64,000 nucleotides of DNA, from the IMG/VR virus record IMGVR_UViG_3300036853_000446, positions 124,001-188,000 of that record. One strand, written 5' to 3'. A model generated the notes under the pieces. It was not told the origin of the DNA. It saw nothing but the letters and a program-made list of their open reading frames with translations, and did no database searches. Every line of letters begins with the position of its first letter. Position 1 is the first letter of the stretch. The translations under genes and the position numbers were made by a program. Below are positions 18,166 to 56,577 of this stretch, piece by piece.

Positions 18166-18672
18166 ATGACACTGACCCATGATTATGACCGCCGCTGGCT
18201 AAAGACGGCTGCGGCACGCCTTCCTGGCAGCCTATTTTATCACGGAACAGCAAGTGACTTTGATGCGTTTGACCTATCTGCTTCCGGCGCACGTGACTTC
18301 GGAGACTTTGGGTTCGGAGTATATTTGACCCCCAGTACTACGATGGCTCGAGGATATGCCTATGCCAGCGCAAAGCGGACACACGGTGAACCTAAAGTCC
18401 TCACCGTCAGTGTGCGTCTCCACAACACAGCTGATTTTGACGACCCGAAACTACAGAGCCAGATCGCTGAAACGCTGGCTATTCCATTTCCTCACAAGGC
18501 GTTGACAACCGGTACACGACAGACACGCCCTCGCTCTGAGGCAATAGCTATCACGGACTACGTGCGCGCTTTGGGTTATGACAGTGGCCTCGCACGCAAT
18601 GGAAAGGAACTCGTTGTCTATGATCCCCGCGCGATAACGATTGAGTCCGTGCAACCGGCGTCCGAAGCCTAG
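18166..18672 (+). CDS. ADP-ribosyltransferase-like protein with HDYDRR leader
   Basis: YHGT, GFGVYLT, A..YA, GYDSG, ELVVYDP. Confidence 0.75.
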   Translation: MTLTHDYDRRWLKTAAARLPGSLFYHGTASDFDAFDLSASGARDFGDFGFGVYLTPSTTMARGYAYASAKRTHGEPKVLTVSVRLHNTADFDDPKLQSQIAETLAIPFPHKALTTGTRQTRPRSEAIAITDYVRALGYDSGLARNGKELVVYDPRAITIESVQPASEA

Positions 18673-18679
18673 GGAGCAA

Positions 18680-18710
18680 CGGCTATGCCATTCGCCTACC
18701 CGGGCAAAGT
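18680..18710 (-). pseudogene. 5-prime fragment of a tRNA-Leu (duplicate of the 18011-18096 start)
   Basis: ggctatgccattcgcctacccgggcaaagtt vs ggctattccgttcgcctactcgggcaaagtt. Confidence 0.7.
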
Positions 18711-18767
18711 TCTATCGAAACACAGCCGTGCACTGATTACCGCCGCGCGGTGTAAGGGCCTTGTCAG

Positions 18768-19538
18768 ATGCCTCGTGATCGACTCCGCCCATTCTTCTGC
18801 TATTTCGGTGGCAAGTGGCGTGAGGCTTTGAAAAGCTATCCTGAACCTCGATACGGGACCATCATCGAGCCCTTCGCGGGTGCGGCGGGATTTGCGGCGC
18901 GCTACGCAACTCGCAAAGTAATCCTGTGCGAGATTGACCCCATCATCGCAGCAGTATGGCGGTACCTAATCAAGGTGACGGCCAAAGAGATCTTATCTCT
19001 GCCCGATCTCGTATCGGAAGAGACAGTGGACAATTTGATAGTCAGTCAGGAGGCCAAATGGTTGATTGGCTTTTGGCTCAATAAGGGCACTTCAGGTCCT
19101 CGCAAGAGTCCCTCGACATGGATGCGATCGAATGTTCGGCCGAAGTCATACTGGGGCGCTCATATTCGACAGATCCTGGCATCGCAGGTTGATTCCATCC
19201 GGCACTGGGAAATCCACAACTGCAGCTACGTTGATTGCCCGACCCCACTCGAAGCAACTTGGTTCGTCGACCCTCCCTACGAGGTCGCGGGGCAAGCCTA
19301 CAGATTTGGCTCCAAACAGATCGACTATCAGCATCTCGGTGATTGGTGCCAAACAAGACCCGGACAAGTCATCGTTTGCGAGAACGAAGGAGCAACCTGG
19401 CTTCCTTTTCAGGACCTCGCAAGTGTGAAGGCGAGCCCCAGATCCATTGCGCCAAACCGCCGCTCCAAGGAGGTTTGTTGGTTGAGCACGTTTGAAGAGG
19501 ATGCATACCTGCAAGCCTTCATGCGAGGCGTCGTATGA
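18768..19538 (+). CDS. Dam-like N6-adenine DNA methyltransferase
   Basis: YFGGK, EPFAG, FVDPPY. Confidence 0.85.
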   Translation: MPRDRLRPFFCYFGGKWREALKSYPEPRYGTIIEPFAGAAGFAARYATRKVILCEIDPIIAAVWRYLIKVTAKEILSLPDLVSEETVDNLIVSQEAKWLIGFWLNKGTSGPRKSPSTWMRSNVRPKSYWGAHIRQILASQVDSIRHWEIHNCSYVDCPTPLEATWFVDPPYEVAGQAYRFGSKQIDYQHLGDWCQTRPGQVIVCENEGATWLPFQDLASVKASPRSIAPNRRSKEVCWLSTFEEDAYLQAFMRGVV

Positions 19539-19550
19539 ATACGGTGGCCT

Positions 19551-21851
19551 TCAAATCGCCACCTCGATTTCCTTCATCGTAACCGTCCCTTGAATGTCTT
19601 TGCCGTCGAGCCCTTGGATCGTAAGGCTGTTTTCATCGAGGCTGGTGAACTCCGTGAACCAGATTTGACCGACGATGACTGCCATTCGAATCTGGCTCAC
19701 CTGATGAAGCAGGTCTCGCACTCTGCTCTTCGCATCCGCTGCCTGCCCCTCGAGCCACGCCTTGAAGGCCTTTTCCGGATCGGCGGCCTTCGCGTACACG
19801 CTGGAGGCGAGGAAGTCGTCGACCTCGTTCACGAAAGGCGCCATGAGTGACGAGCTGGCCGTATGCTTGCCCGACGCGATCCGCGTCTGGACGTCCTTCA
19901 GGGTCGGCAACGTGCTGAGGCCTTTGAGCGCGACGTGCAGCTCTTTACCGATGTAGACGTCCTGAGCCTTGGCTTGCTTGCCCTTGGGTCCAAACCCGCT
20001 GTAGTCGGTGATGCCCTGTTCCTTGAGCCACTCGGCGCCGTCCGCGCCGTACAGGACCTTGAAGCCGTCGCTCGCCCGCCTCTCGAACCGGTCCTTCAGA
20101 TAGGTGTTGTAAACCTTCTGTCCAGCCCTCGCGATCGTCAGCTCGTATTCGAGTTCGAAGAACCGCTTGGCGCTAGTCGCTTGCACCATGGCGCGGTTGA
20201 TGATCGGCAGCTCGCGGAGATTTATCGAGAGGACACCGGGCGACACGACCTGAACCGCAGTGGCGGGGATCTTTGCCTTCTTCAGCTTTTGCACCGTGTC
20301 GTCGGTGAGCTTCAACGGCAGCGTCTCGACATTGACCAAGCCGTCACGGATGATCGCGTAGTTTCGATAGGTAAACGTCGGGAAGACGTCGGGGACCTTG
20401 GGAAGCTCACCCCCTTTGCGGTCCTTCAGATTGACGGTGCCCTCGCGTCGCACCTGCACCGAGACATTCGGCCGTTCCTCGTTATAGATGAGCGCGCCGA
20501 CGGGCACCCCGTCGGGCATGGGCGTGGCTTCGAACTTCAGAGGCGCAATTCCCGTCTCGATGTCCGCAAGTCGTGTCTTCAGGTTATCGAGAAGGATGCC
20601 CTTGGCGACTTTCATCTCGCGCCTGATCTCGTCGACCTCCTTCTGTTCCTCCGCGGTCAGACCCGCGTCCTGGACCCGCTGACGGCCGATCCGATTGTAT
20701 TTGAACAGGTCCGAGTCGAGCAGCAGCCGGTTTCCTTCGTCCTCGCTGATGATCCTGAGCAGATCGAGCACCGTGAAAGCATTCTCGTCGGGAACCGCCT
20801 CGGCGTCATAACCCTGCTGGTACCGGAGCCACGGGTCGAAGCAGGCGAGCGTTGCCTCCTCGACAAACGCGGCGTACTTCTGCTTTCCGAAACAACCCGA
20901 CCAAAGTCTGATGAGCCGCACATCGCCGATGGTCTTCAGCAGCTTGAGCACGACGTCTGTCGCCATGCGCTGGCCGTAGAGGGCCACTGCCGCGTAAGCT
21001 GCGGCGATACTGCTCTCGTAGGTGGCGTGGGCGAAGTCAATCCTCACTGGCTCCCCCTTCCCCTCCACCGCAGGTGACAGGTACCAAACCTCGTCGACCT
21101 GCTGAGGTACCGTGACCTTGCCGCCCTCGACCTTGAAGGTCAGCAACGTCGCCCCGTCGATCGCAAACGCAAACCCCTTGATTGCGTCGGCGTCCAAGTC
21201 GACCTCGATTCGCTTTGCCCCGAGCGGACGCTTCTGCATCGCGGCCTCAAAGGCGGGCTCGTACTTCTTGAAATCCTCGTTGAGGATGAGCGCGCCGCCC
21301 GCCGTCTCCGCCATGGAGACCATGAGCGGGTGGTTGCAATAGTAGCCGTACTCGACGAACGTGGCCGACGCGACCACGGGCACGACGTCCTCGACCGCCT
21401 TCAGGATCTGCGCCTGCGACCACTGGTTGTCATGTCCATCGGACATAAAGAAAAGCGAGCAGACGCCCTTTAGGCCGGCAGCGACCCGCTTCACCTCCTC
21501 CAGGGGCTCCTTGAACCCCGTGAGCCCCACCGGCTTGAGCCAGCGGTCAATCGCCTTGTTGATGTCGCTCAGGTCCTTCAGGCTGGCAACGGGCTCGCCC
21601 TTGACCAAAGTGCCGAATTCGCCCTTACCCGAGAACCAAATCAGGCTGAGGGTGTCCCCCTCGGCAATGAGCCGAGGGAGCTTGTCCTTGAGCTGCGTGC
21701 GGATGAGTGGCAGATCCCCGTACATGCTGCCGGAAACATCGATCGCGACCAAATGGTTGGTCGGTTGCGGTGCGAGCTTCGCGCTGGCGGATCGAGGGAC
21801 CGCAACCGACACCAATTCGAATGGGCTGACCGAGTAGGCTGTCTTGGACAT
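19551..21851 (-). CDS. Large vWA-domain protein
   Basis: AIDVSGSM, FMSDG; long C-terminal region unassigned. Confidence 0.8.
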   Translation of the reverse strand: MSKTAYSVSPFELVSVAVPRSASAKLAPQPTNHLVAIDVSGSMYGDLPLIRTQLKDKLPRLIAEGDTLSLIWFSGKGEFGTLVKGEPVASLKDLSDINKAIDRWLKPVGLTGFKEPLEEVKRVAAGLKGVCSLFFMSDGHDNQWSQAQILKAVEDVVPVVASATFVEYGYYCNHPLMVSMAETAGGALILNEDFKKYEPAFEAAMQKRPLGAKRIEVDLDADAIKGFAFAIDGATLLTFKVEGGKVTVPQQVDEVWYLSPAVEGKGEPVRIDFAHATYESSIAAAYAAVALYGQRMATDVVLKLLKTIGDVRLIRLWSGCFGKQKYAAFVEEATLACFDPWLRYQQGYDAEAVPDENAFTVLDLLRIISEDEGNRLLLDSDLFKYNRIGRQRVQDAGLTAEEQKEVDEIRREMKVAKGILLDNLKTRLADIETGIAPLKFEATPMPDGVPVGALIYNEERPNVSVQVRREGTVNLKDRKGGELPKVPDVFPTFTYRNYAIIRDGLVNVETLPLKLTDDTVQKLKKAKIPATAVQVVSPGVLSINLRELPIINRAMVQATSAKRFFELEYELTIARAGQKVYNTYLKDRFERRASDGFKVLYGADGAEWLKEQGITDYSGFGPKGKQAKAQDVYIGKELHVALKGLSTLPTLKDVQTRIASGKHTASSSLMAPFVNEVDDFLASSVYAKAADPEKAFKAWLEGQAADAKSRVRDLLHQVSQIRMAVIVGQIWFTEFTSLDENSLTIQGLDGKDIQGTVTMKEIEVAI

Positions 21852-21904
21852 GAGCCCCCGGTACACCGGAGGCCCATGCCCTCTGTTCGATCCCCCCTAC
21901 GCCT

Positions 21905-22120
21905 TCAGTGGCGTCGAGATCGACGCAGCGTTGCCAGCGAGATGACGTGCCATCTGCTCTCGCAATCCTCGACGCCTTCCTTAAACTTCAAGTAACTCGC
22001 CTGCTCTTGAGGCGTCAGCAAACGCCCGTTACGGGTCCCGTCGGTAGTGCGGAGCGAGCACATGTGGCAATGCCCCTTGATTCCGCCCCGGCGACGGCGT
22101 CTGCGCTTGTAATGAGCCAT
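21905..22120 (-). CDS. small basic hypothetical protein
   Basis: SD AAGGAAAGGGA; CHMC. Confidence 0.45.
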   Translation of the reverse strand: MAHYKRRRRRRGGIKGHCHMCSLRTTDGTRNGRLLTPQEQASYLKFKEGVEDCESRWHVISLATLRRSRRH

Positions 22121-22263
22121 TCGAGATCCCTTTCCTTACCGGCGTCACCGGCGTGGTTGGGATCTCGTCTCGGCAAACCGAGCATATGGCGAATGGGCGA
22201 GACATTTAGCGGAAGCATACGAGTGCGTCCGGAGGAATCAAGTTCTGAGGTCCCGGTTCCGGT

Positions 22264-22893
22264 TCAGTGGATGAGCTTCGCGATGTCCTGCCAGGTTTCG
22301 AGTTCTGCTCTCCAACGCCCGATATCTTCTTCGGTCGTACGATTCTCGCCGTTGATGGTGATGCTGATCCCACCCGCTGCCGCCCGAGCCAAGTACTTGA
22401 GCTTCAACTTGGCGACGTCGCGGAGGATCCCGAAATCGGCCTGAGGAAAATCCTTAATAAACTCCAGGACTTCAGACTCCTTCGAATACATGCCAAGCCC
22501 TGCCCACTGAACGTGCTTCTGGGAATCGAGGTACATGACGCCCGCTAGGTCCATGTACGTGCTGGCCTTCGGCTTGTTCCATCGCCCCGTCTTCGGATTT
22601 TCCGTCTGGCTCATGAAGCGGAAGCCCTTTTTCGGCTTCATTTCGAGCCAGTACCGGATCTTGCACCGCAGCTTGAAGCTGTACGGGTAGTCGTCGACGT
22701 TGTACGCCGTCTGCTCGCTGTCGTGGCCGTAGAGCGGCGTGCCACGACTCGCCACCCTTGCTCCCGCGACGCGCTCGGCCAGACCGAGAAGCTCGCTCGC
22801 GAGTCGCTGCCGCTCGGGATGGCGAGTCTGAGCGTACGCGAGGATTTCGTGAAGCTCACGGGTCAGGTGCTCGGGGCTGGCAATTTTCTGCAT
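22264..22893 (-). CDS. KIASP-leader protein
   Basis: MQKIASPEHLTRELHEILAYAQ..PER..LA..L..LAERVA. Confidence 0.8.
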   Translation of the reverse strand: MQKIASPEHLTRELHEILAYAQTRHPERQRLASELLGLAERVAGARVASRGTPLYGHDSEQTAYNVDDYPYSFKLRCKIRYWLEMKPKKGFRFMSQTENPKTGRWNKPKASTYMDLAGVMYLDSQKHVQWAGLGMYSKESEVLEFIKDFPQADFGILRDVAKLKLKYLARAAAGGISITINGENRTTEEDIGRWRAELETWQDIAKLIH

Positions 22894-22994
22894 CGGTGAT
22901 CTCGCTCTCCTCGTAACGGAGACCATCAAACGAAAACTGCCCGGTGCTGCCTGCCCGTCCGACGAGCACGCAGGTCGACGGCACCGCTCCCAAC

Positions 22995-23324
22995 CTAAAG
23001 CAGATTTGCGCCGCTGGATGCAGCTGCCTCGACGGGATGACCTTCGAAATAGAAGGAGACCGTACCCGGCGCGTTGGATTGAATCCGAGTCAGCCCCAGG
23101 CGGAGCAGGCTCTTCATGTCGTCGCCCATCACGGAAAGGTTGTTGTTCACCTTCGCCGTGAGCATGTGAATCTGATCCTGGACGAAATATTTGTGCTCGA
23201 GAATCTTCGTTGGCGCCAGGTTGCTCACGAAACGCCCGAGGTGGCTGAGCTTTGGTGGAAGCGGATAGTCTCCGCTCCCGTAGGAATTGTCTGCTGCCGC
23301 GATGCGCTCGTAGGAGTAGGTCAT
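22995..23324 (-). CDS. hypothetical protein with YSYER leader variant
   Basis: MTYSYERIAAA; TCGTTTTATCG 13 nt upstream. Confidence 0.7.
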   Translation of the reverse strand: MTYSYERIAAADNSYGSGDYPLPPKLSHLGRFVSNLAPTKILEHKYFVQDQIHMLTAKVNNNLSVMGDDMKSLLRLGLTRIQSNAPGTVSFYFEGHPVEAAASSGANLL

Positions 23325-23347
23325 GTCCTGCAGCTCCGATAAAACGA

Positions 23348-24010
23348 TCAGTGGTAGTCGACCTTCACACCGAGGGTCGCCCATGTCTTGCGAAACATGT
23401 CCAGGCTAATGAAGCGCCGCGCCCGCTCGTGGTTATCCCGCATCCAAGCGTAGAAGGTCTGCGCGTCCCGCTTCTTCTGCGGGTGGTAAGACGTGTCTTG
23501 GAAGAAGCCCGGCTTTCCGGGCGGCCCCTCCATGGCATGGTGATCGGTGATCCGGAAATCCAAGGGAGACGACACGACTTCGATGTAGCCCTTGTCACGT
23601 TGCGGGATCCGGAACTCGAAACTCTCCCCGTTCGGCTCGACGTCGATCGCCCTCAGGTCGGTCATCTCGATGGATATCTCCGTCGGAAAGTCCACTTGAA
23701 CGTCTGTGATAAACCGACAAATCGCGTCGAACCCGCCGCGGGACCCCTCGTCTACGAAAAACCCGCCCATACGCGCAAACCACTCATCGTGTTTGCCCTG
23801 ATACGAGTACGTCAACATAACCGTCATCTCGCGGCATTTCTTCCCGCGCTTCCCGGCATCCGTCAGGTCTGTGACGCGGAGCGAGTCGCTGTACCGGTGA
23901 ACCCGCACCTGGTCGTTCTGAAAGGTCTTGCCGAGCGGCAAACTGCCGGCCGTCAGGTAACGGCGGGCAACACGGTACCGCTGGACGACGCGGGCGACGA
24001 GAGAGGCCAT
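23348..24010 (-). CDS. hypothetical protein with RVV.RY / VARRYL leader
   Basis: MASLVARVVQRYRVARRYLTAG. Confidence 0.75.
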   Translation of the reverse strand: MASLVARVVQRYRVARRYLTAGSLPLGKTFQNDQVRVHRYSDSLRVTDLTDAGKRGKKCREMTVMLTYSYQGKHDEWFARMGGFFVDEGSRGGFDAICRFITDVQVDFPTEISIEMTDLRAIDVEPNGESFEFRIPQRDKGYIEVVSSPLDFRITDHHAMEGPPGKPGFFQDTSYHPQKKRDAQTFYAWMRDNHERARRFISLDMFRKTWATLGVKVDYH

Positions 24011-24042
24011 AACGGTCATGGGACGACAATAGAAAAAATCGG

Positions 24043-24111
24043 GGCTGCGGCGGGGAATCGAACCCCTCAAACCCCCTTCACAGAGGGGCCCACTTCCAAA
24101 GTAACCGCAGC
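24043..24111 (-). tRNA. trnH: tRNA-His(GTG), shortened D-arm
   Basis: GCTGCGG/CCGCAGC acceptor, CCCCT-CT GTG AA-GGGGG, TTCGATT. Confidence 0.6.
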
Positions 24112-24121
24112 ATACACCGAG

Positions 24122-24194
24122 TCAGAGTGGGAAGACTCGAACTTCCAACCCCTTGGCCCCCAGCCAAGTGCTCTGCCAATTGAGCTACACCCTG
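24122..24194 (-). tRNA. trnP: tRNA-Pro(GGG)
   Basis: CTTGG-CT GGG GG-CCAAG. Confidence 0.9.
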
Positions 24195-24306
24195 AGAATC
24201 CCATGCAGCCGCCGTTGAAGGCCGTCTGCATGGGTGGGATCGTCGTTCTTGGGCGCGACGATCCAGCGAGCCGTACGGGGATGGACCCAAGTCCATACGG
24301 CTCTCG

Positions 24307-24391
24307 AGGAAGGCGGAGGTATCGATCCCCAGACCCTTGCGAGTCCCCTTCGTTCAGCAAACGAGGCCAGCACCTTGCTGGTTCACCTTCC
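24307..24391 (-). tRNA. trnS: tRNA-Ser(GCT), A54 T-loop
   Basis: CTCGT-TT GCT GA-ACGAA, long variable arm, ATCGATA loop. Confidence 0.75.
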
Positions 24392-24409
24392 GAATGTCCT
24401 TCACCTTCG

Positions 24410-24482
24410 CGCCCCCGGCAGGACTCGAACCTGCGTCACCGAGCTTCGGAAACTCGTGCCTCATCCACTAGGCTACGGAGGC
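24410..24482 (-). tRNA. trnR: tRNA-Arg(CCG)
   Basis: CGAGT-TT CCG AA-GCTCG. Confidence 0.9.
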
Positions 24483-24571
24483 ATTGTGAAACGAAGGATC
24501 GAACTCCGACCTCTGCATTCCAACTGAAATACGGCCCCTCCTTGCGGATCTTCTTTTGAAGAACCGCGTGC

Positions 24572-24901
24572 ATGATCCACGACTACCAGCGACGCACGTC
24601 CGGTCAGCAACGATACGATGCACTCATCAGACAAATCGTCTCCGAGGTAGACGACGTCACCGAACCGGTCAAGCGGGTTGTCACGAAACTTCCAAGGCTC
24701 ATCGACACATTGGAAGAACTGGTCGAAAACGACGACGAGCTGAGGTCAACAGATCCCCGGGGTGGCAAACGGTACGGAATCGATCAGGTTCTCACGGAAA
24801 TGCGTAAGAGGCTCGAAGCGGTCAAGGATGCAACGACCGACCTCGAATGGGCGTACGACGAGCTAAACAATCGCTTCCAAAAGAACGTCCCGCGCACCTA
24901 A
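24572..24901 (+). CDS. helical protein with HDYQRR leader
   Basis: MIHDYQRR; TCTTTTGAAG 11 nt upstream. Confidence 0.75.
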   Translation: MIHDYQRRTSGQQRYDALIRQIVSEVDDVTEPVKRVVTKLPRLIDTLEELVENDDELRSTDPRGGKRYGIDQVLTEMRKRLEAVKDATTDLEWAYDELNNRFQKNVPRT

Positions 24902-24910
24902 CCAAGTCAG

Positions 24911-24982
24911 CGTCCCCGGAAGGAGTCGAACCTTCGTCGTGCCTTTAGGAAAGGCCCACTCTATCCATTGAGCTACGGGAAC
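24911..24982 (-). tRNA. trnR: tRNA-Arg(CCT)
   Basis: GGCCT-TT CCT AA-AGGCA. Confidence 0.85.
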
Positions 24983-24988
24983 AAAGCG

Positions 24989-25075
24989 CAGAGAGCTGAG
25001 GTAACGATCCCCACACCCTTACGAGTGCCAATCCGCGTCCGACGGATGCCCGAACCTCTCGGGGGTTAACTCTCC
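24989..25075 (-). tRNA. trnS: tRNA-Ser(GGA), atypical (C33, ATCGTTA T-loop)
   Basis: ATCCG-TC GGA CG-CGGAT, long variable arm. Confidence 0.6.
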
Positions 25076-25081
25076 AAACAG

Positions 25082-25154
25082 TCTGGGCGGCCCGACTTGA
25101 ACGGGCAACCTCCGCGCCCCAAACGCGGCACTCTACCAATTGAGCTACGCCCAG
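25082..25154 (-). tRNA. trnP: tRNA-Pro(TGG)
   Basis: CCGCG-TT TGG GG-CGCGG. Confidence 0.92.
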
Positions 25155-25168
25155 ATTAAACTTCGGCC

Positions 25169-25534
25169 ATGGCTGGCGACCGATTCATCTACTTCGAAGA
25201 TCGTGTGCCGACACACGAGGAGATCCGCACAATCCTCGAGAACTACCTCGGCGGCTGTGGCACCGTCACCGAGCCCCAACCGAACTGGTGGATGATCGAC
25301 CTGCCCGGTCGCAACACCTCGACCTTCAAGGGGATCCAAGGAAGCGGGCCCGACGTCTTCACGGACCCCGACTTTGACGTGCGGTGGATCGAGGTCATCT
25401 TCCAGCGAACCGCCGGGCTCCCGCCTTCGCTCGACGTCCTGACCCGCCACGCCGACAGCTTCACGGGTGACGTCGCCAGCTCGTTGGCGCGCACGTTTGC
25501 GGCCTTCTTCCGCGGACGGCTCGAAGACACCTGA
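25169..25534 (+). CDS. hypothetical protein
   Basis: Clean ORF between tRNA and convergent gene. Confidence 0.65.
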   Translation: MAGDRFIYFEDRVPTHEEIRTILENYLGGCGTVTEPQPNWWMIDLPGRNTSTFKGIQGSGPDVFTDPDFDVRWIEVIFQRTAGLPPSLDVLTRHADSFTGDVASSLARTFAAFFRGRLEDT

Positions 25535-25606
25535 GTCAATGACTCGCCTTCCTCTCGAAAAGGAGGACCCGCTCGAGAAAGACCCGCCTGAGGAATATGT
25601 GCAGTC

Positions 25607-26140
25607 TCACTGGTTATCGTACCGGCAGCTCGCGCAATCGGAGTCGCGCGGCTCATCTTCGATGCTGCCACAGCTGCACCCCGTCCAGCGGCCATGTGAG
25701 TGTGACCGTGAACCAGATGAACCCGATGAGCCAGACGAGCCCCCCGTGCCGACAGTGAATAGCCAGACGCTACGGTCGGTCCAGATCAAACGACCCAGTG
25801 TCACCTTCGAAGTCTGACCGCTCTTCTTGCGTACCGTGACTTGGTCCCCGGGACTACCAACGCTCGTCAGCCGAACGCCCCACGATCCGTCACGCAGCTT
25901 GGCCCACGTGGCATCTTCGCCGCCTCGACCAAGCTTGGTCATCCGCCGAATCTCGGCCTCGCTCGGCTCCGGGCCCTCGACGTAAGGGCCCTTCGATGCC
26001 ACCTCGTCCTGTGCCATCAGATCGTCAGCAAGGCGCCCGAGCTTCCTTGCCAGCTTGACCCTCGACGGGCTCGACGATTGGCAATAGGCGAGAATGCTCT
26101 TCAAACCGTCCTGCAGGTGCCGTGGCGAGCGGATCTTCAT
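25607..26140 (-). CDS. KIASP-leader protein, GS-linker and Cys-rich tail
   Basis: MKIRSPRHLQDGLKSILAY..PSR..LA..L..LA; C-terminal CSCG..CASC. Confidence 0.8.
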   Translation of the reverse strand: MKIRSPRHLQDGLKSILAYCQSSSPSRVKLARKLGRLADDLMAQDEVASKGPYVEGPEPSEAEIRRMTKLGRGGEDATWAKLRDGSWGVRLTSVGSPGDQVTVRKKSGQTSKVTLGRLIWTDRSVWLFTVGTGGSSGSSGSSGSRSHSHGRWTGCSCGSIEDEPRDSDCASCRYDNQ

Positions 26141-26215
26141 AATCCATGGCGTGCATCAAAAGAAATCTCGCGGAGAGAGACCGATTTGGAAGCGGAGCAT
26201 CCGGAGATTTCGAAG

Positions 26216-26428
26216 CTAGAACAGCCACATCGAATGGGAGATGGCCAGCATCCCGCATCTCGAGCACGAGGCGGACGACATTGCGCCTCCGTCTTCGTAG
26301 ATCTCCTCCACGCCCTCCCCGTCCCAAACGTGCCCGCAGGGACCACCTTTCGAGCATTCGCAAGCGCACTTCGCGTTGCCGGCGCCGCACGAGTGGATCA
26401 GCACGGGATCTTCAGTCGAATCTGCCAT
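26216..26428 (-). CDS. small Cys-rich protein
   Basis: Seven Cys plus His; CGGTGTA 10 nt upstream. Confidence 0.6.
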   Translation of the reverse strand: MADSTEDPVLIHSCGAGNAKCACECSKGGPCGHVWDGEGVEEIYEDGGAMSSASCSRCGMLAISHSMWLF

Positions 26429-26482
26429 GTGAGGATGTACACCGCGTCCCGCCGGTAATCCATTTGTCGTTCCATACGGATC

Positions 26483-26644
26483 ATGCTCATTGCAGTCATC
26501 CCGCTGGTTTTCACAATCGTTGGCCTGCTCATGTGGGTGCTCGCCTCGAACCCCCTCATCAAAGAAGCCGGCAGAATCATCTTCTTCGCCGCCTTTCTCG
26601 CGCTGATGTTTGCGTTCTCGAGCAAGACGCTGAGCGTCGGCTAA
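26483..26644 (+). CDS. 53-aa two-TM membrane protein (below ORF-track cutoff)
   Basis: MLIAVIPLVFTIVGLLMWVLASNPLIKEAGRIIFFAAFLALMFAFSSKTLSVG; TCCATTTGTCG upstream. Confidence 0.6.
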   Translation: MLIAVIPLVFTIVGLLMWVLASNPLIKEAGRIIFFAAFLALMFAFSSKTLSVG

Positions 26645-26711
26645 CCGGGCTCTGCTGACACCGCACGCGCGCCACATCACGGGTATCGCGCAGCGGGTCG
26701 CGGAACACGAG

Positions 26712-26784
26712 TCAAGATGGGGAGACTTGAACTCCCAACCCCTCCGCCCCGAACGGAGCGCTCTGCCAATTGAGCTACATCTTG
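26712..26784 (-). tRNA. trnP: tRNA-Pro(CGG)
   Basis: CTCCG-TT CGG GG-CGGAG. Confidence 0.92.
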
Positions 26785-26785
26785 G

Positions 26786-26858
26786 CGTCCCCGGAAGGAC
26801 TCGAACCTTCAATCGCCGGTTCCGCAAACCGGTGCTCTATCCATTGAGCTACGGGGAC
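26786..26858 (-). tRNA. trnR: tRNA-Arg(GCG)
   Basis: CCGGT-TT GCG GA-ACCGG; A20 in D-loop. Confidence 0.9.
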
Positions 26859-26864
26859 AAATCG

Positions 26865-26947
26865 TGCTGTCGAGAGGACTTGAACCTCCAAGGAGTTGCC
26901 CCCACCCGTACCTCAAACGAGCGCGTCTGCCTTTCCGCCACGACAGC
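26865..26947 (-). tRNA. trnL: tRNA-Leu(GAG)
   Basis: CTCGT-TT GAG GT-ACGGG, long variable arm. Confidence 0.88.
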
Positions 26948-26978
26948 ATAAACTTTTGATTGCCCACCACCGGGCAAG

Positions 26979-27527
26979 ATGAAGATGCATGACGCCCTCC
27001 TCGAGGACCTCCTGGACCACCGGCTCAACCCTTGTTACGACAAGATCCCCGGTTCTCCCTCGTATGTCCTGATTGACGACAACGCCGTAGAGATCAAGGC
27101 CCCCGTCCGCGTGTTTGTTCCGATGACAGAGGTCACCGACGACGTCGAGGAAAGAACGCTGCTTCTGATCAAGATGGCTGCCGAGAACGGAAGCATCGGC
27201 ATCGAGTGGGATGGATCGTTTCTATCGATCCACAATCATTTCGACACCGTGCATCTACCCTTCGACGTGGTCGTAAAGAATCCTGAGACCAAGATTGATC
27301 TCCCTCCAGACATCAAATACATCAAGCACCGAGATGTGACAGCCGACCGCTTTTACTGTCTCACGCGCAGCGATTTACTCGGGCGACTTCCGCGGTGCCC
27401 CGGCACTATCGCGCACGGTCTCAAGAGCCCAGACAAGCTCGGCTTTCTGATATTTAACCCGAAAGGGATCTTGACCGTCTTCTTCGAGCCGCAAGCGAAA
27501 GCCGTCGATATTCAGGCTCAGGCGTGA
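26979..27527 (+). CDS. hypothetical protein
   Basis: Clean 182-aa ORF between tRNAs. Confidence 0.6.
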   Translation: MKMHDALLEDLLDHRLNPCYDKIPGSPSYVLIDDNAVEIKAPVRVFVPMTEVTDDVEERTLLLIKMAAENGSIGIEWDGSFLSIHNHFDTVHLPFDVVVKNPETKIDLPPDIKYIKHRDVTADRFYCLTRSDLLGRLPRCPGTIAHGLKSPDKLGFLIFNPKGILTVFFEPQAKAVDIQAQA

Positions 27528-27537
27528 GCAAGAGAGG

Positions 27538-27619
27538 CGGAAGGCGGAGGAATCGAACCACGTAGCTTTCACTACCCCCAGTTTTCAGGACTGGTTTACC
27601 ACCGCTGGCGGCGCCTTCC
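27538..27619 (-). tRNA. trnS: tRNA-Ser(TGA), C33
   Basis: CCAGT-CC TGA AA-ACTGG, long variable arm. Confidence 0.7.
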
Positions 27620-27674
27620 ATAGACTCTGTGCGCTGCATTCGTCTGCCGGAACTATTTGTCGCCCGGCATCTGT

Positions 27675-28376: not shown

Positions 28377-28450
28377 TACAGGGCGCCGGATTCGAACCGC
28401 GCCACCACGGCGCTGTCATCGCCAGCCAGTCTCTAGACTGGATGCCCTGC
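28377..28450 (-). tRNA. Atypical tRNA-Val(GAC)-like
   Basis: GCAGGGC/GCCCTGT acceptor, TGGCG-AT GAC AG-CGCCG, palindromic D-arm CCAGTCT-AG-AGACTGG. Confidence 0.5.
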
Positions 28451-28456
28451 AAGAAG

Positions 28457-36140: not shown

Positions 36141-36141
36141 T

Positions 36142-47078: not shown

Positions 47079-48077
47079 GTATCGGGCCGCCACGCGCCGA
47101 CTCGCGTTCGTGCGACGGTCGATCAAGGTGGCCGCGTGCTCGAACGTGCTCGCGTCCCATTCGTCCCAGTGGGGTAAACTCGCCAAGGCCACCTTACGGC
47201 TTCTCAAGACCTCGAGGACCTGTTCCACGGCATCCTCGACCGTGGCACTGATGCCCTTCACGTCGCAGTCCGTGGAGAACTGCGCGTAGAAATCTCGGAA
47301 AGAGTCAATTATATCGCGGCATTTGAAGACGGCATCTTCTAGGCGCGACGGGACCACCGCGGCGTCGTCATCGCTACTGACCGAAAGGGCGAGCAGCTCG
47401 TTGAGGCGTCCCGACTCTTTATCGAGTTCCTTGTACACGTCCATATACTTGCCGAACTCCACGCAAAGGCTTGTCAGACCCACGACGCTGATCAGCTTTT
47501 TTGCCGCGGTCGTGCGTTTGCTCAAACCTTTCAGTTTGGAACTCGCCCGTGACGCCTGCTCCAAGACGGCTTTTGAGCCTCGGACGATGTCCTGCATGCG
47601 CCGCTGTCTCTTGCCGGTCGTCGTCTTGACGGCCAACTCCGCAAAGTCGTGCAGCTCGTCCACGGTGTCAGCAAAGTCGTCCTTGAGATATTCACGCAGA
47701 TCGACCCGCCAGGAAAGATAGAGATGGCTGATTTCTCTGACCGTCCTCTCGAAAGCGGTCGTGGCACGTTGCTTGGCCTCTTTGATGGTGGCCAAGTCGA
47801 TGCGCCGCTGACTCGTGTCCGTCCCCACCTCCGTACGGTCGTTGACCCGCTTGCCCTCGAGGACCTCTTTGGCCACGTTGATCTCGACCATCATCGTTGG
47901 GCTCCCACCGCGGTCGGGATGGTGCTCTTTAGCTTTCGATTTCCACGCCTTGTTGATCTCGGCATCCGAGGGGCTCGAGCCAGGCGGGAAGCCGAGCACG
48001 TCCTTGGCCTCCTCGAGCGTCATTGCCGTCCGGAGCCATCGGGCGGCGGTCTGGTAAGCGTCATGGCGGTGTGGCAT
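47064..48077 (-). CDS. DnaJ J-domain protein with AARWL leader and RVAARYL tail
   Basis: AKDVLGF..INKAWKSKAKEHHPDRGG. Confidence 0.85.
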   Translation of the reverse strand: MPHRHDAYQTAARWLRTAMTLEEAKDVLGFPPGSSPSDAEINKAWKSKAKEHHPDRGGSPTMMVEINVAKEVLEGKRVNDRTEVGTDTSQRRIDLATIKEAKQRATTAFERTVREISHLYLSWRVDLREYLKDDFADTVDELHDFAELAVKTTTGKRQRRMQDIVRGSKAVLEQASRASSKLKGLSKRTTAAKKLISVVGLTSLCVEFGKYMDVYKELDKESGRLNELLALSVSSDDDAAVVPSRLEDAVFKCRDIIDSFRDFYAQFSTDCDVKGISATVEDAVEQVLEVLRSRKVALASLPHWDEWDASTFEHAATLIDRRTNASRRVAARYLETS

Positions 48078-53481: not shown

Positions 53482-53530
53482 GGCGCGCCAGGATAATGTC
53501 TCTATCAGGCGTCACCTTGTCGAGAAGGTG

Positions 53531-54826
53531 ATGAACAGAAAGGCAATGGCATTGAAGGTCGCGCGGGCGTGGTTGCGACGTGCTGCGGTCGTGCCCGATG
53601 ACCTCTTTGATCGATATTCACATCAATTGAAGGGGATCCTTTCCGGTCCCACCTCAGGGCCACGCAGCGTCGCACAGATGATTCGCAAGGGCATCGAGCC
53701 GTTGTTCCATCAGTTCGTGCATGATCTCCGCGAGACTGGGCTTACACGAAACCTCCTCGCGCATGTCGTTCGCAATCTCAATGCCGACCTGAAGATCCTG
53801 AAAGAGATTGAGACGAACCTCGAAAACCTGCACATCGCAATGACCTGCCCGCAGGGTGACGACAAATATTTGCCCGAGCACGAGATCAAGTGCCGCCTTG
53901 CCAGTGTGTTGAAAGATTGGTTCGACAACAGCGTCAAAACAATCGACCAAGCCCTTTTAGAGAACTGGTCGGTACGCTCCATAGGTGCAACCGGCCTCGT
54001 TGACCAGATCCTGAAGCAGGCCAGCCCGAAAGAATTGTCGATGCTCGGGGCTGTTGCGAACGGAGATGAGTCGACGGAGGTCCTTCAGCAACTGCGCGCC
54101 TTCAACGTGCGCGCTGTCGACCCCCTCGCCAAGAAACTCGTCATCAAAAACTGGCTCGGCGACGACAATTGGTGGCTCGGCCTGTTTGACCAAGTGAAGC
54201 GTAATCTCACCCACGAATCCGCCACCGATAGACCCGATGAGCAATTCGACCTTCACGGGATGAAGGTCGTCGTCGACGACGATACGGTGAACGCGGCTGA
54301 TATCCGTGCCTATGTTAAATACTTCGATATCGCCTATCAGAGCCTGAAGTCGAGGCGACTCCACTCGGCGTGGTACGGCGACATACTGATCGATTGCAAA
54401 GGCTGCGGGGGAGTCATCGATACGGGCGCAAATATTGGTGGCCACTTCAACGTCGGAAAGGATCAGGTCACGATCTTTGCTCGACCCGGCCCGACGATCA
54501 GCTACATTGTGGTACATGAGCTTGGACACCGGTACTGGTTCAAGAGCTTGTCGCGAGGCCAGCGCGGCAAGTTCGAATCCCTCGTAAAGGTGAAGGGCGA
54601 CGGCGCCAAGCCGGTCCTTCCCGTCTCTGACTACGGTGCTTCAAACATCGACGAAGCGTTTGCCGAGGCATTCGCCTGGTATGTCCTCCGCCGGAAGATG
54701 AACGCCGATCAAGAGGCTTCATTCAAGGCGGTCCTGCTCGACAAGGATCGCCGCTCCGTCACGTCCAAAACGGCGTCGAGATCGACGAGCGCCGCAAGAC
54801 GAGTCAGACGACCTCGATCTTCCTGA
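53531..54826 (+). CDS. Zincin metallopeptidase (LF/MPTase-like) with KVARAWL leader
   Basis: VVHELGHRYW, SDYGASNIDEAFAEAF. Confidence 0.8.
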   Translation: MNRKAMALKVARAWLRRAAVVPDDLFDRYSHQLKGILSGPTSGPRSVAQMIRKGIEPLFHQFVHDLRETGLTRNLLAHVVRNLNADLKILKEIETNLENLHIAMTCPQGDDKYLPEHEIKCRLASVLKDWFDNSVKTIDQALLENWSVRSIGATGLVDQILKQASPKELSMLGAVANGDESTEVLQQLRAFNVRAVDPLAKKLVIKNWLGDDNWWLGLFDQVKRNLTHESATDRPDEQFDLHGMKVVVDDDTVNAADIRAYVKYFDIAYQSLKSRRLHSAWYGDILIDCKGCGGVIDTGANIGGHFNVGKDQVTIFARPGPTISYIVVHELGHRYWFKSLSRGQRGKFESLVKVKGDGAKPVLPVSDYGASNIDEAFAEAFAWYVLRRKMNADQEASFKAVLLDKDRRSVTSKTASRSTSAARRVRRPRSS

Positions 54827-55604
54827 CCTTCACATTCCGTGGGTTGAACACGGCGATCTCCGGCACGCCTTGGACGAGGTTGGTGCCGTAGAAAAAGACC
54901 GAGTCATACCCTTTTGATCGCGCTTTACGAGCCTGGCTCGTGCTCTTCGTGACCAGCGGATTGCTGACAGTCACCGCCACCGTATAGACCTTCGGGCGGT
55001 ACGTTTTAGAATCCAGGCCGAGCGCGTCGAGGTTGTCATAAACATAGTCGGGAGCGCCCGTAGAGGAATTCATCAACTCGTCGAGCACCGAGTCCGTCTC
55101 GGACCCGAGGGGCTTCACTTTGCTGCCGATGATGTATGCGGCCAGGTCGCTCACGGCGTTGGGGTCGACGCCGAGGTAGTCCTCGAAGCCGACGAGGTCG
55201 ACATGTCCCTCTCCCGGGCCCGGATTCTCTCGCCAGAAACCGGCATCCTGGAGGGCGCGCGTCCACCCGCCGTCTCCGTGCTCGACGAGCATCTCGAGGA
55301 ATCTGCCGGCGGCCGGTTTCCTCCGCTTCAGGTCCGCGACGATCGTGGGCGAGAAGCCTATGTTACGGTTCGCGTAGGCGTACTCGCCGGCAACCCGCTT
55401 GCTCGGGGTCAGGAAGATCCCTCTGCCGTAATAGCTGTCGACCAGTTCGTCGCGGCTCTGACCCATGTCGAAGCTGCGAAAGAGCCGCGTCGTGCCGTGG
55501 TAAAGGGTCACCGGATGGCCCGTGCGAAGGCCCTCCAGATGGTACTCGACGAGAGGATCTACGGTCTCGCGCGCGACCCGGCGATCGTAATCGTAGGCCA
55601 GCAC
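54804..55604 (-). CDS. ADP-ribosyltransferase-like protein with YDYDRR leader
   Basis: LYHGT, GRGIFLT, A.EYA, GYDSV, EIAVFNP. Confidence 0.75.
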   Translation of the reverse strand: MLAYDYDRRVARETVDPLVEYHLEGLRTGHPVTLYHGTTRLFRSFDMGQSRDELVDSYYGRGIFLTPSKRVAGEYAYANRNIGFSPTIVADLKRRKPAAGRFLEMLVEHGDGGWTRALQDAGFWRENPGPGEGHVDLVGFEDYLGVDPNAVSDLAAYIIGSKVKPLGSETDSVLDELMNSSTGAPDYVYDNLDALGLDSKTYRPKVYTVAVTVSNPLVTKSTSQARKARSKGYDSVFFYGTNLVQGVPEIAVFNPRNVKVRKIEVV

Positions 55605-55608
55605 GGCT

Positions 55609-56577
55609 TCAAACCAAGAGCTGGAGAAGGTCCCGCTCCGATGGCAAGAGCAGCACCTTGCCGAGCGCCCCGCGGTCGACGGCGAGCTTCAGACGCTCGA
55701 TGACCTCGTCGTCCAGATACTGCTTCGCCAGGTTCCGCATGAGGCTACGGCGCTCGCCGTTCTTGTTGAGCCAAGCGAGATACCGCGATCGATTCATCCC
55801 GCCTTCGCCCCCGCTCCGATGACTCGCGTCGTTCCAGGCCGCGATAATCTGCTCCTCCGTCATGCCGCCGGCTTTGCCCTCGATATAGATCCAGGCCCAG
55901 GGCTCGCCTGCCGGGCCGAGCAACAGGGGGTTGCTCTTGAACTTCCGCTCGATCTCGTTCCACAGGGCCCTGTCGTCCGGTCTCGGTTCGTGCTCGTGGT
56001 GCACGCTGTCGCCGAATTCCGGGTCGTCACGGATCTCCTGCCGTCGTGACCGGCTGATGAGGACGTCCTTGATGCGCATCGTAAATCCGTTGGCCATGTA
56101 GTGAATGGCCTGGCCCACGTTGTTATCCCCGGAGAGCGCGTGTCTCTGAAGCATCGCCGTATAATTGTTCCAGGCCTCCTCCACGACGGGCAGCGGGATC
56201 TTCCGCTTGCCGGCCATCGAGAGACTAAAGATGCGCGAGCCAATGGCATTAGCGATCGGCCTGAGCTTCGACAGCGTGTTGTGTTTGATGAAGGGTCGCA
56301 GCTCTTCGATGGTCTTGCCTTCGATATCGCCCGGCGTGCCCGCCTCCTCCATGCTGATGAGCGCCTGCAGCCCGATCGACAGGTTCATGTCGTCCCGGGT
56401 GAAGGCCCGTCGGATGAACGCTCGTCGGGTGAGAGCCTTGTGGGTGGATACCTCCCGGGTCGAGGCCTCTCGCAGGAACGCCTGAACGATGCTGGCGATC
56501 CGGACTCGCACCGGCACGGCGGCCAGAATCGTTCGAGATAGCTGCAGGGCGTCGGAGGCGAGCGCTTGGCGGGTCAT
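55609..56577 (-). CDS. Possible divergent sigma-factor-like protein with RIAS..FLREAS N-terminus
   Basis: Region-2-like VEEAW..AIHYM...RIKDVL..RSRR; region-4-like GMTEEQII; weak resemblance. Confidence 0.45.
   Translation of the reverse strand: MTRQALASDALQLSRTILAAVPVRVRIASIVQAFLREASTREVSTHKALTRRAFIRRAFTRDDMNLSIGLQALISMEEAGTPGDIEGKTIEELRPFIKHNTLSKLRPIANAIGSRIFSLSMAGKRKIPLPVVEEAWNNYTAMLQRHALSGDNNVGQAIHYMANGFTMRIKDVLISRSRRQEIRDDPEFGDSVHHEHEPRPDDRALWNEIERKFKSNPLLLGPAGEPWAWIYIEGKAGGMTEEQIIAAWNDASHRSGGEGGMNRSRYLAWLNKNGERRSLMRNLAKQYLDDEVIERLKLAVDRGALGKVLLLPSERDLLQLLV

What the first reader, a model, noticed from the sequence alone, without database searches (positions are those of the whole stretch)
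18166..56577. Candidate modular virion-cargo system: about 20 unrelated proteins carrying shared address tags
Seen: about 20 dispersed genes with unrelated bodies start with one of three recurring leaders (KIASP..ELQ, DYDRR, RVA.R[YFW]L). The bodies are 2 ART-like, 2 LF-like HExxH peptidases, a GNAT, 2 J-like, an SH3-like and unknowns. Many leaders end in x-x-A followed by S, A, G or M (RVA|S, EVA|S, EAA|S, KEA|S, RLA|S, KTA|A, YLA|S, RTA|M). Most genes share an AT-rich upstream motif with a capsid-decoration-like gene. Known: T4 internal proteins use an N-terminal capsid-targeting sequence removed by the prohead protease; ART, GNAT and MPTase domains are typical of phage polyvalent proteins delivered at infection. 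Inference: this is a deconstructed polyvalent system in which a portable tag routes any fused effector into the head for cleavage and ejection.
Basis: partly seen in the sequence, partly recalled or inferred. Interest (0 to 1): 0.92.

Follow-up and report, generated by a model that had tools for sequence, protein, structure and literature searches.

The report
Portable address tags on huge-phage effectors
A 407-kb uncultured phage puts one of three short, conserved end-tags on about 20 otherwise unrelated small proteins; the tags recur in hundreds of proteins of related huge phages and mark the domain boundaries of their giant multi-enzyme "polyvalent" proteins, so they look like a shared docking or delivery code whose destination has not been shown.

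Summary
The core observation holds and reaches well beyond the window.

- **K tag:** a 44-residue N-terminal helix-loop-helix on 8 window genes. An exhaustive profile search found it in 674 protein clusters, almost always at residue 1, with unrelated and unannotated bodies. It is absent from Pfam, PHROGs, PDB, GenBank phages, plasmids and, in effect, cellular genomes.
- **D tag (DYDRR):** heads 5 genes and occurs nowhere else in six frames.
- **R tag (RV[AV]xR[YF]L):** solid for 4-5 genes, doubtful for 3-4.

New findings:
- In related huge phages the R motif sits between the domains, and at the ends, of true polyvalent proteins (NUDIX, TopoIB, HExxH, LPD1).
- It heads at least 39 of 55 orthologues of the window's HExxH protein.
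- It also heads a conserved small protein next to the large terminase gene.
- Tags can be N-terminal, C-terminal, tandem or swapped (D for R) on homologous bodies.

So "portable tags on split polyvalent-type effectors" is well supported. Capsid loading, cleavage and ejection remain inference. The proposed x-x-A|S site is barely above chance, and the "capsid-decoration-like" gene has no support. The window comes from an uncultured phage, so no virion data exist.

The parts
22264..22893 (-). K-tagged gene, 209 aa; leader is residues 1-45, followed by a second RVAS
   Evidence: no Pfam or PHROG hit; upstream motif at 22926-22934 (67)
25607..26140 (-). K-tagged gene, 177 aa
   Evidence: Its body resembles P0004, which carries two K domains at its C-terminus instead, and the K-led L012:2651. 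Motif at 26156-26164 (67)
33402..34325 (+). Helical protein, 307 aa, with a K domain at both ends (N copy 33402-33536, C copy 34200-34322)
   Evidence: AF2: H6-20/H27-42 at pLDDT 94-97, H270-285/H290-306. Orthologues P0002 and P0166-P0171 keep both copies
39206..39697 (+). K-tagged gene, 163 aa, with an R-type motif (VVARYV) near its C-terminus; the 3' end overlaps tRNA-Asn on the other strand
   Evidence: motif at 39183-39191 (67)
42101..42808 (-). K-tagged gene, 235 aa; body is DUF7007 (residues 61-165)
   Evidence: K-led orthologue at L010:9229-9942 (71)
43186..43548 (-). K-tagged gene, 120 aa, with a divergent leader
   Evidence: found by a profile that did not include it, E=3e-10
44453..44794 (-). 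K-tagged gene, 113 aa; body is a small beta-barrel (SH3/Sm-like)
   Evidence: motif at 44825-44833 (67)
44994..45749 (-). K-tagged gene, 251 aa; by eye the body starts with a J-like segment lacking HPD
18160..18672 (+). D-tagged gene, 170 aa; ART-PolyVal domain at residues 26-157
24572..24901 (+). D-tagged gene (DYQRR), 109 aa, body unknown
   Evidence: motif at 24551-24559 (67)
35505..36140 (+). D-tagged gene, 211 aa; its homologue in another phage carries an R tag
   Evidence: motif at 35472-35480 (67)
46457..46711 (+). D-tagged small ORF, 84 aa; the weakest gene call of the set
54804..55604 (-). D-tagged gene, 266 aa; ART-PolyVal; last gene of a three-gene run
23348..24019 (-). R-tagged gene, 223 aa; two tandem R motifs at the N-terminus
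   Evidence: motif at 24026-24034 (67)
36384..37556 (-). R-tagged HExxH (zincin-like) protein, 390 aa; a conserved gene of this huge-phage clade
   Evidence: at least 39 of 55 orthologues start with the R motif; homologue in LR745208.1 also R-led (116-119)
37659..38099 (-). R-tagged GNAT acetyltransferase, 146 aa
   Evidence: best window hit of the independent R model
47064..48077 (-). J-domain protein, 337 aa, with a canonical R motif at its extreme C-terminus and a looser one at the N-terminus
38107..38949 (-). Loose R candidate, 280 aa (RVRDRYF, then GRVAS)
   Evidence: not recovered by the independent model
29015..29422 (-). Degenerate R candidate, 135 aa; its orthologue in L019 has a canonical R leader
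53528..54826 (+). HExxH paralogue of 36384, 432 aa, with a loose R-like N-terminus
   Evidence: not recovered by the independent model
55609..56577 (-). Doubtful R candidate, 322 aa
   Evidence: only; no statistical support
12813..44833 (.). Eleven copies of the upstream motif TYCNWTTGW, 11-45 nt before gene starts: 12813, 22926, 24026, 24551, 26156, 26459, 31898, 35472, 39183, 42081, 44825. Probably a phage promoter.
   Evidence: related phages have other motifs before their K genes

Best explanation
**What is shown.** The window is part of the accessory region of an uncultured 407-kb phage. Its invasion-type effectors (ADP-ribosyltransferases, a GNAT, zincin-like peptidases, J-domain proteins and many unknowns) are encoded as separate small genes, each with its own promoter. 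Other phages fuse such domains into one giant polyvalent protein. Each small protein carries a portable terminal tag:
- **K:** a 44-aa helix-loop-helix hairpin followed by a flexible linker.
- **R:** a 7-residue basic/aromatic motif.
- **D:** a lineage-specific DYDRR variant.

The tags are kept by selection on the protein and are interchangeable between bodies.

**What is inferred.**
- The tags act as docking modules for a shared phage-encoded partner.
- The most likely purpose is to gather these effectors for co-delivery: loading into the prohead in the manner of T4 capsid-targeting sequences or scaffold-type coat-binding hairpins.
- The R motif may also serve as the recognition or processing site of the conserved R-led HExxH peptidase.

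The destination (capsid) and any cleavage are inferred, not shown.
For: - **The K tag is real and protein-level.** 69% of codons differ at positions where the amino acid is identical. AF2 gives a hairpin at pLDDT 93-97 followed by a low-confidence linker.
- **The K tag is widespread and specific to huge phages.** 674 clusters, 336 of them at E<=1e-10, nearly all matching at residues 1-45 with unrelated bodies. It lies on 10 other IMG/VR contigs of 93-448 kb, often several per locus. It has 0 hits in 50,697 GenBank phages and 72,556 plasmids, and 1 hit on a 2.6-kb contig among 185,579 genomes.
- **The tags are modular.** Copies occur at the N-terminus, the C-terminus and in tandem on related bodies. 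D and R are swapped between homologues.
- **Link to polyvalent proteins.** ART-PolyVal domains in the window. L015 encodes NUDIX-R-R-TopoIB-R-X-HExxH-R in one ORF. L010 encodes R-HExxH-LPD1-R-TopoIB, flanked by three more R-led genes including a Zeta-toxin-like kinase.
- **The R leader is conserved** in at least 39 of 55 orthologues of 36384 down to 34% identity, and in LR745208.1.
- **The R motif occurs in the packaging module.** It heads a conserved roughly 125-aa protein next to TerL and occurs in a 1000-1300-aa neighbour.
- **Background.** Polyvalent effectors are packaged and injected, and their metallopeptidases are proposed to process them (PMC5512222). T4 CTS peptides of 10-20 aa route Alt and the internal proteins into proheads, and giant-phage paralogues share N-termini (PMC5694885).
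Against: - No virion, proteomic or cleavage data exist for this uncultured phage.
- No head gene lies in the window, so no receptor can be named.
- The tagged genes sit among tRNAs and replication or accessory genes.
- A K-led gene lies near TerL in only 1 of 14 TerL loci.
- Tags at C-termini and between domains do not fit a simple removable N-terminal propeptide.
- The proposed x-x-A|S site is near chance.
- K bodies are unannotated, so calling them 'effectors' is itself an assumption.
Confidence: 0.45

Rival explanations
1. The tags are processing or assembly marks and not capsid addresses. The R motif would be the site that the conserved HExxH peptidase recognises, either to cut polyvalent proteins into units or to hold split units together in a cytoplasmic complex, much like the docking domains of modular synthases. 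The K hairpins would be pairing domains. Delivery into the virion would not be involved.
For: - R motifs sit exactly at domain boundaries and ends of polypeptides that contain an HExxH domain.
- The HExxH protein is conserved across the clade and is itself R-led.
- K domains occur at both ends of one protein and in tandem.
- PMC5512222 proposes metallopeptidase autoprocessing of polyvalent proteins.
Against: - An R motif 3-8 residues from the N-terminus, or 4-6 from the C-terminus, of a single-domain protein has nothing to release.
- K-tagged proteins almost never carry an R motif (1 of 171).
- No cleavage has been observed.
Confidence: 0.25
2. The K domain is a self-association or regulatory domain of a fast-diversifying family of small host-takeover proteins. 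The conserved N-terminus would be the working part (oligomerisation, or binding a conserved host hub such as a chaperone, RNA polymerase or the ribosome), and the variable C-termini would tune specificity. No trafficking would be involved.
For: - Each gene has its own promoter and lies among tRNA and accessory genes, like the early genes of large phages.
- The hairpin has more conserved hydrophobic positions than a lone two-helix unit needs.
- Leader-only proteins of 45-67 aa exist.
- Helix 2 weakly resembles coiled-coil tetramerisation helices.
- J-domain and GroEL genes lie nearby.
Against: - The bodies have different folds (beta-barrel, DUF7007, long helices), so they were fused on and did not diverge from one ancestor.
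- The domain also works from the C-terminus.
- No host partner is indicated.
Confidence: 0.17
3. The K domain is a ribbon-helix-helix-like DNA-binding domain, and the K family are regulators or antitoxin-like proteins.
For: It has the same size and a similar strand-P-helix-loop-SR-helix layout. A PSR N-cap resembles the RHH helix-B cap (by eye).
Against: - hhalign against the window's own RHH antitoxin gives probability 0.2%.
- Pfam finds that antitoxin but none of the K leaders.
- The putative strand has only about 4 residues.
- No toxin partners are present, and the bodies are enzymes or unrelated domains.
Confidence: 0.03
4. The leaders are chance resemblances, recent duplicates or a DNA-level repeat.
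For: The loosest R candidates (55609, 53528, 38107) and the x-x-A|S 'sites' are at chance level.
Against: - K E-values are 1e-10 to 1e-29 in the window, with 674 outside clusters.
- Synonymous sites are saturated.
- The D motif is found only at N-termini.
- The R leader is conserved across orthologues.
Confidence: 0.02

Closest known systems
T4 capsid-targeting sequences (internal proteins IPI-III, Alt) and the propeptides of phiKZ/SPN3US-type giant-phage inner-head proteins
   Same: - A short conserved N-terminal peptide is shared by otherwise unrelated proteins, one of which is an ADP-ribosyltransferase (Alt).
- It is portable to foreign cargo.
- Giant-phage paralogues keep identical N-termini while their bodies diverge (PMC5694885).
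   Different: - The K tag is a folded 44-aa hairpin, not a 10-20-aa peptide.
- The tags also occur at C-termini, in tandem and between domains.
- No L/I-x-E or A/S-x-E protease motif is present.
- There is no virion evidence.
- K is far more conserved across phages than any known propeptide.
Polyvalent proteins of phages and conjugative elements (Iyer et al. 2017, PMC5512222)
   Same: - The domain repertoire matches: ART-PolyVal, zincin-like HExxH peptidase, GNAT, and LPD1, NUDIX and Zeta-like kinase in relatives.
- They occur in phage genomes and have a predicted role at invasion.
   Different: - In the window the domains are split into single-domain genes, each with a tag.
- A recurring heptad motif at every domain boundary is not mentioned in that paper: 'linker' occurs 0 times and 'cleavage' is never used for such sites.
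- TopoIB appears as a module.
Cargo-loading or encapsulation peptides of encapsulins and bacterial microcompartments, and the P22 scaffolding protein's C-terminal helix-loop-helix coat-binding domain (from general knowledge)
   Same: - A short helical element at either terminus, joined to the cargo by a flexible linker.
- One element serves many cargos.
- The P22 domain is also a helical hairpin of about 40 aa with essential basic residues.
   Different: - No sequence or fold match was found.
- No shell partner has been identified.
- The phage context differs.
N-terminal trafficking domains of polymorphic toxins, including MuF-fused phage toxins (from general knowledge)
   Same: A conserved N-terminal module is followed by hypervariable C-terminal modules, with many paralogues.
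   Different: - The K tag is much smaller.
- There are no immunity genes.
- The bodies are mostly not recognisable toxins.

Membership tests
T4-type capsid-targeting sequence | N-terminal peptide of about 10-20 residues shared by cargo proteins | tested here: inconclusive
   The D and R tags fit in length and position. The K tag is 44 aa and folded, and both K and R also occur at C-termini and internally.
T4-type capsid-targeting sequence | Ends in a prohead-protease cleavage site and is removed | not testable with these tools
   The protease and its specificity are unknown. The proposed x-x-A|S is only 1.5-fold over background.
T4-type capsid-targeting sequence | Carriers are present in proheads or virions, and the tag alone is enough to package a foreign protein | not testable with these tools
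   The phage is uncultured, and no relative exists among 50,697 GenBank phages apart from the unannotated LR745208.1.
Polyvalent proteins (Iyer 2017) | 2-15 effector domains in one polypeptide | tested here: not met
   The window proteins have one recognisable domain each. The feature is met in relatives, L015:5334-8609 and L010:1187-4054.
Polyvalent proteins (Iyer 2017) | Characteristic domain repertoire (ART-PolyVal, MPTase, LPDs) | tested here: met
   PF18760 ART-PolyVal twice in the window. HExxH plus a downstream E motif twice, though with no Pfam MPTase hit. PF18796 LPD1 in L010.
Cargo-loading peptide / scaffold-type coat-binding hairpin | Terminal helical element plus a flexible linker, at either end of the cargo | tested here: met
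   AF2 gives two helices at pLDDT 93-97 followed by a linker at pLDDT 47-68. Both N- and C-terminal copies exist.
Cargo-loading peptide / scaffold-type coat-binding hairpin | Binds the shell or coat protein | not tested
   No capsid gene is in reach, and no multimer prediction was available.
Ribbon-helix-helix | Profile similarity to RHH families | tested here: not met
   hhalign probability 0.2%. No Pfam RHH hit for the K leaders, while the window's antitoxin does hit RHH_1.
Any curated protein family (Pfam, PHROGs, PDB) | Significant match of the K leader | tested here: not met

The most novel reading that the evidence does not exclude
A clade of uncultured huge phages would use a general, programmable protein-addressing code. 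Any protein fused to a 44-aa hairpin (K) or a 7-residue motif (R/D) would be docked to one phage-encoded receptor and loaded into the capsid for co-injection. The same R motif would serve as the cut or dock mark that lets polyvalent proteins be fused and split freely in evolution. That would make hundreds of unannotated K-tagged proteins a catalogue of injected host-takeover and anti-defence factors.
Probability: 0.3. Interest if true: 0.92.

Novelty: new variant of a known kind. Interest (0 to 1): 0.8.

Why it matters
- **An undescribed protein family.** The K hairpin defines a large family (at least 674 clusters at 50% identity) that no database or paper I could search describes. Its leader is far more conserved than anything attached to it.
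- **Testable hypotheses about polyvalent proteins.** The R motif gives polyvalent proteins a visible 'punctuation'. That makes the long-standing idea that they are processed or assembled into units directly testable, and it points to one conserved HExxH protein as the candidate enzyme.
- **Practical consequences if the tags are delivery addresses.**
  - They would flag, by sequence alone, the injected proteins of huge phages. These are a likely source of anti-defence and host-takeover factors.
  - They would offer a compact handle for loading foreign proteins into large capsids.

Tried and rejected
- **DNA and context searches.** Megablast of 20 kb against GenBank phages found nothing.
- **Searches that failed for technical reasons.**
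  - Locus searches with the window-only K alignment A1 (viral contigs) and with A2 (genome contigs) failed because no stretch was conserved enough. A2 did work on viral contigs, and the tighter A4 was needed for genome contigs.
  - A homologue search seeded with the divergent leader of 42101 returned only the query itself.
- **Family and structure searches on the tags and bodies.**
  - PHROGs on tagged and untagged unknowns gave nothing useful.
  - A PDB sequence search with the K profile and Foldseek of both AF2 models gave no significant match.
  - The RHH hypothesis was rejected.
- **Proposed cleavage sites.**
  - A second RVA just after the K leader is not enriched among 132 representatives (4 seen, 2.9 expected).
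  - x-x-A|S as a cleavage site was rejected as uninformative.
- **Link to head or packaging genes.**
  - A K-led gene lies next to TerL in L021 but in none of 13 other TerL loci, and its body has no homologue there.
  - The proteins of 526 and 701 aa beside it gave no significant PDB sequence match (one weak E=0.03 hit for the 701-aa protein).
  - Contexts of other K and HExxH genes are accessory or replication regions, not head modules.
  - 'Capsid-decoration-like gene': 31295-31882 and 41421-42065 gave only weak hits.
  - My own guess that 18768-19538 is a Dam methylase was not borne out by Pfam.
The Pfam scan at E<=0.01 gave no family at all for the two HExxH proteins.
- **Out of reach.** I could not get to the rest of the 407-kb contig, including its capsid, portal and protease genes.

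Full report
**Origin and setting**

The window has about 60% G+C and no close DNA relative among GenBank phages. A protein-seeded scan placed it on IMG/VR contig IMGVR_UViG_3300036853_000446, which is 407,634 bp long; the window is bases 124001-188000.

- It carries 30 tRNA genes, all on the minus strand, between 16.2 and 40.7 kb.
- Pfam-identified genes: NAD-ligase, class II ribonucleotide reductase, DNA polymerase III delta and delta', a GroEL-type chaperonin, a vWA protein, dCMP deaminase, a MazF/RHH pair, a 992-aa DNA methylase, a response regulator and MotA/ExbB.
- A second, 771-aa protein shows only a vWA-like tblastn label and no Pfam hit.

This is an accessory and replication region of an uncultured huge phage. 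No head gene lies in it. I called genes with a self-trained codon model and checked the starts by hand.

**The K leader**

Eight ORFs begin with a roughly 44-residue domain (consensus M-x-K-I-A-S-P-x-E-L-Q ... L-A-Y ... P-S-R ... L-A-x-R-V-A).

- A profile built from seven of them found the eighth at E=3e-10, and nothing else in six frames scored below E=0.1.
- The protein at 33402-34325 has a second copy at its very C-terminus.
- At positions where two leaders share the same amino acid, 69% of codons differ. Conservation is therefore at the protein level and is not a DNA repeat or a recent duplication.
- AlphaFold2 gives two helices (about residues 6-21 and 27-43) at pLDDT 93-97, then a low-confidence linker, then the body.
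- The bodies are unrelated to each other by blastp. Recognisable ones are DUF7007, a small beta-barrel, a J-like segment and a long helical protein.

**The K leader outside the window**

An exhaustive profile search of 1.84 billion representative proteins found 674 clusters at E<=1e-3, 336 of them at E<=1e-10.

- In nearly all, the match covers residues 1-45 of a protein of 45-354 aa, and similarity stops right after ...L-A-D-R-V-A-[GA].
- The few 'internal' matches are preceded by a methionine and look like mis-called starts. P0004 is a genuine exception, with two tandem copies at its C-terminus. Its body resembles that of the N-terminally tagged window gene 25607.
- Of 150 representatives, only six have any Pfam hit, each to a different family.

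The leader has no match in Pfam, PHROGs or PDB, by sequence or by fold. It has none in 50,697 GenBank phage records or 72,556 plasmids. It has one hit, on a 2.6-kb MAG contig, among 185,579 species genomes. It does occur on ten other IMG/VR contigs of 93-448 kb, often several copies per 20 kb and often inside tRNA arrays. A full-text search for the motif found nothing relevant.

**The D leader**

The pattern [DE][YFW][DQEN][RK]R occurs five times in the six-frame translation (about 1.6 expected by composition). All five lie at residues 3-10 of ORFs, and two of those ORFs are ART-PolyVal proteins. Three more D-led genes lie within 11 kb of a close relative, L019. The D leader was not seen in more distant relatives, so it looks specific to this lineage.

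**The R leader**

The strict pattern RVAxR[YFW]L occurs at three N-termini and at one C-terminus, that of the J-domain protein. The motif is short, so I trained a model only on other phages. Its best window hits were:

- the GNAT gene 37659;
- the C-terminus of 47064;
- the HExxH protein 36384;
- 23348, with two tandem copies;
- the C-terminal region of K-tagged 39206.

These are the flagged genes, though the E-values are only 0.02-0.6. Four further candidates (38107, 53528, 55609, 29015) are not supported statistically, although the orthologue of 29015 in L019 has a canonical R leader.

The strongest support is evolutionary. Of 55 orthologues of 36384, on contigs of up to 490 kb and down to 34% identity, at least 39 begin M-x(2-8)-R-V-x-x-R-[YF]-L. 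So does the homologue in the GenBank record LR745208.1. The public gene call for the window copy starts 22 residues too late and misses the leader.

**The link to polyvalent proteins**

This is the most informative new result.

- In contig IMGVR_UViG_3300027985_000843, one ORF reads NUDIX, R-like motif, R motif, topoisomerase IB, R motif, unknown domain, HExxH, and then an R motif five residues from the stop. The preceding gene ends in an R motif, and the next gene is an R-led homologue of the window's HExxH proteins.
- In IMGVR_UViG_3300017991_000048, four adjacent genes are all R-led: a 102-aa protein; a 955-aa protein with HExxH, LPD1, an internal R motif and topoisomerase IB; a homologue of the window's D-tagged 35505; and a Zeta-toxin-like kinase. 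They are ordinary separate genes with their own starts and different stop codons.

LPD1 and ART-PolyVal are marker domains of the polyvalent proteins of Iyer et al. (PMC5512222). That paper proposes that such proteins are packaged or transferred at invasion and processed by their metallopeptidase domains. Its text does not mention a recurring boundary motif. The window's phage therefore encodes the split form of such a system, with the R motif at the module ends. The same body can carry a D tag or an R tag.

**The destination**

- **For a capsid link.** In 10 of 13 TerL loci of related huge phages, a conserved roughly 125-aa protein directly upstream of the large terminase begins M-S-D-D-x-L-x-L-R-V-A-A-R-F-L. 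A low-complexity protein of 1000-1300 aa a few kilobases downstream has one or two R motifs near residue 75-100. One K-led 305-aa protein lies between a sigma-like gene and an intein-bearing TerL.
- **Against it.** That K gene is absent from the 13 other TerL loci. The neighbours have no annotation. Other K and HExxH genes lie in accessory or replication contexts.

Each tagged window gene has its own upstream motif, TYCNWTTGW. Eleven copies lie 11-45 nt before starts, including starts of untagged genes and of the chaperonin operon. Other phages have different motifs. This is probably a phage promoter of unknown timing. The 'capsid-decoration-like' gene could not be substantiated.

**Cleavage**

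An alanine followed by S/A/G/M occurs at 3.8% per residue in tagged N-termini against 2.2-2.8% elsewhere, so one or two per leader are expected by chance. [RK][VIL]A[SAG] is enriched 10-30 fold, but it is part of the tags themselves: the K leader contains it three times, which suggests an internal repeat. A second RVA after the leader is not enriched in the wider family. Nothing here shows cleavage, and tags at C-termini or between domains do not behave like simple propeptides.

**Verdict**

'Virion cargo, cleaved and ejected' is the leading hypothesis but is untested.

- I put about 0.8 on the tags being docking or recognition modules for a shared phage partner.
- I put about 0.45 on that partner being the assembling capsid.
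- The main rivals are processing or assembly marks for the conserved HExxH peptidase, and a self-associating domain of early host-takeover proteins.
- A ribbon-helix-helix reading was tested and rejected.

Noticed in passing
window 16248-40650: 30 tRNA genes, all on the minus strand, interleaved with the tagged small genes. Related phages show the same mix, with 17-31 tRNAs per 20 kb around their K genes.
   Followed up: partly
window 48186-48766 (-): A complete MazF/PemK toxin plus RHH antitoxin pair inside the phage, next to a 992-aa N6/N4 DNA methylase (48865-51843) that has a weak 4Fe-4S-like segment.
   Followed up: partly
window 39630-39703 against 39206-39697: tRNA-Asn on the minus strand overlaps the last 68 nt of the K-tagged gene on the plus strand.
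   Followed up: no
window 10809-12821 (-): A GroEL-type chaperonin preceded by a 129-aa ORF, with the same upstream motif (12813-12821) as the tagged genes. J-domain proteins are also encoded, so the phage carries its own chaperone set.
   Followed up: partly
window 36384-37556 and P0172: The public gene call for the HExxH protein starts 22 residues downstream and omits the R leader that at least 39 of 55 orthologues conserve. Automatic start calls may hide such tags.
   Followed up: yes
L015:5334-8609 and L010:1187-4054: Eukaryotic-type topoisomerase IB catalytic domains as modules of phage polyvalent proteins, each preceded by ...R-Y-(L)-x-x-K-(Y)-K-x-K-K-Q-V-P.
   Followed up: partly
L021:17001-20351; L029-L031 and L039 (TerL about 3.3 kb): The large terminase of these huge phages carries an intein with a LAGLIDADG domain in some genomes but not in others (match lengths of 3.3 kb against 1.9 kb).
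   Followed up: no
L029-L040, about 8.8-9.4 kb (upstream of TerL): A conserved R-led, highly charged protein of about 125 aa that ends in a G5 run. It has no PHROG hit. Its position suggests a packaging role (small terminase?).
   Followed up: partly
window 31999-32283 (-): A 94-aa protein made up almost entirely of Asp/Glu runs. It could be a DNA mimic or a charge-balancing internal protein.
   Followed up: no
window 27657-28376 (+): A papain-family (C1) cysteine peptidase domain in an untagged 239-aa protein (E=3e-5).
   Followed up: no
window 46653-47078 (+), 62651-63763 (-): A stand-alone response-regulator receiver domain and a MotA/ExbB-type channel protein encoded by the phage.
   Followed up: no
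P0064, P0014, P0139: Proteins of 45-67 aa that consist of the K leader and little else. They may be decayed genes, contig-end fragments or free competitors for the K receptor.
   Followed up: no
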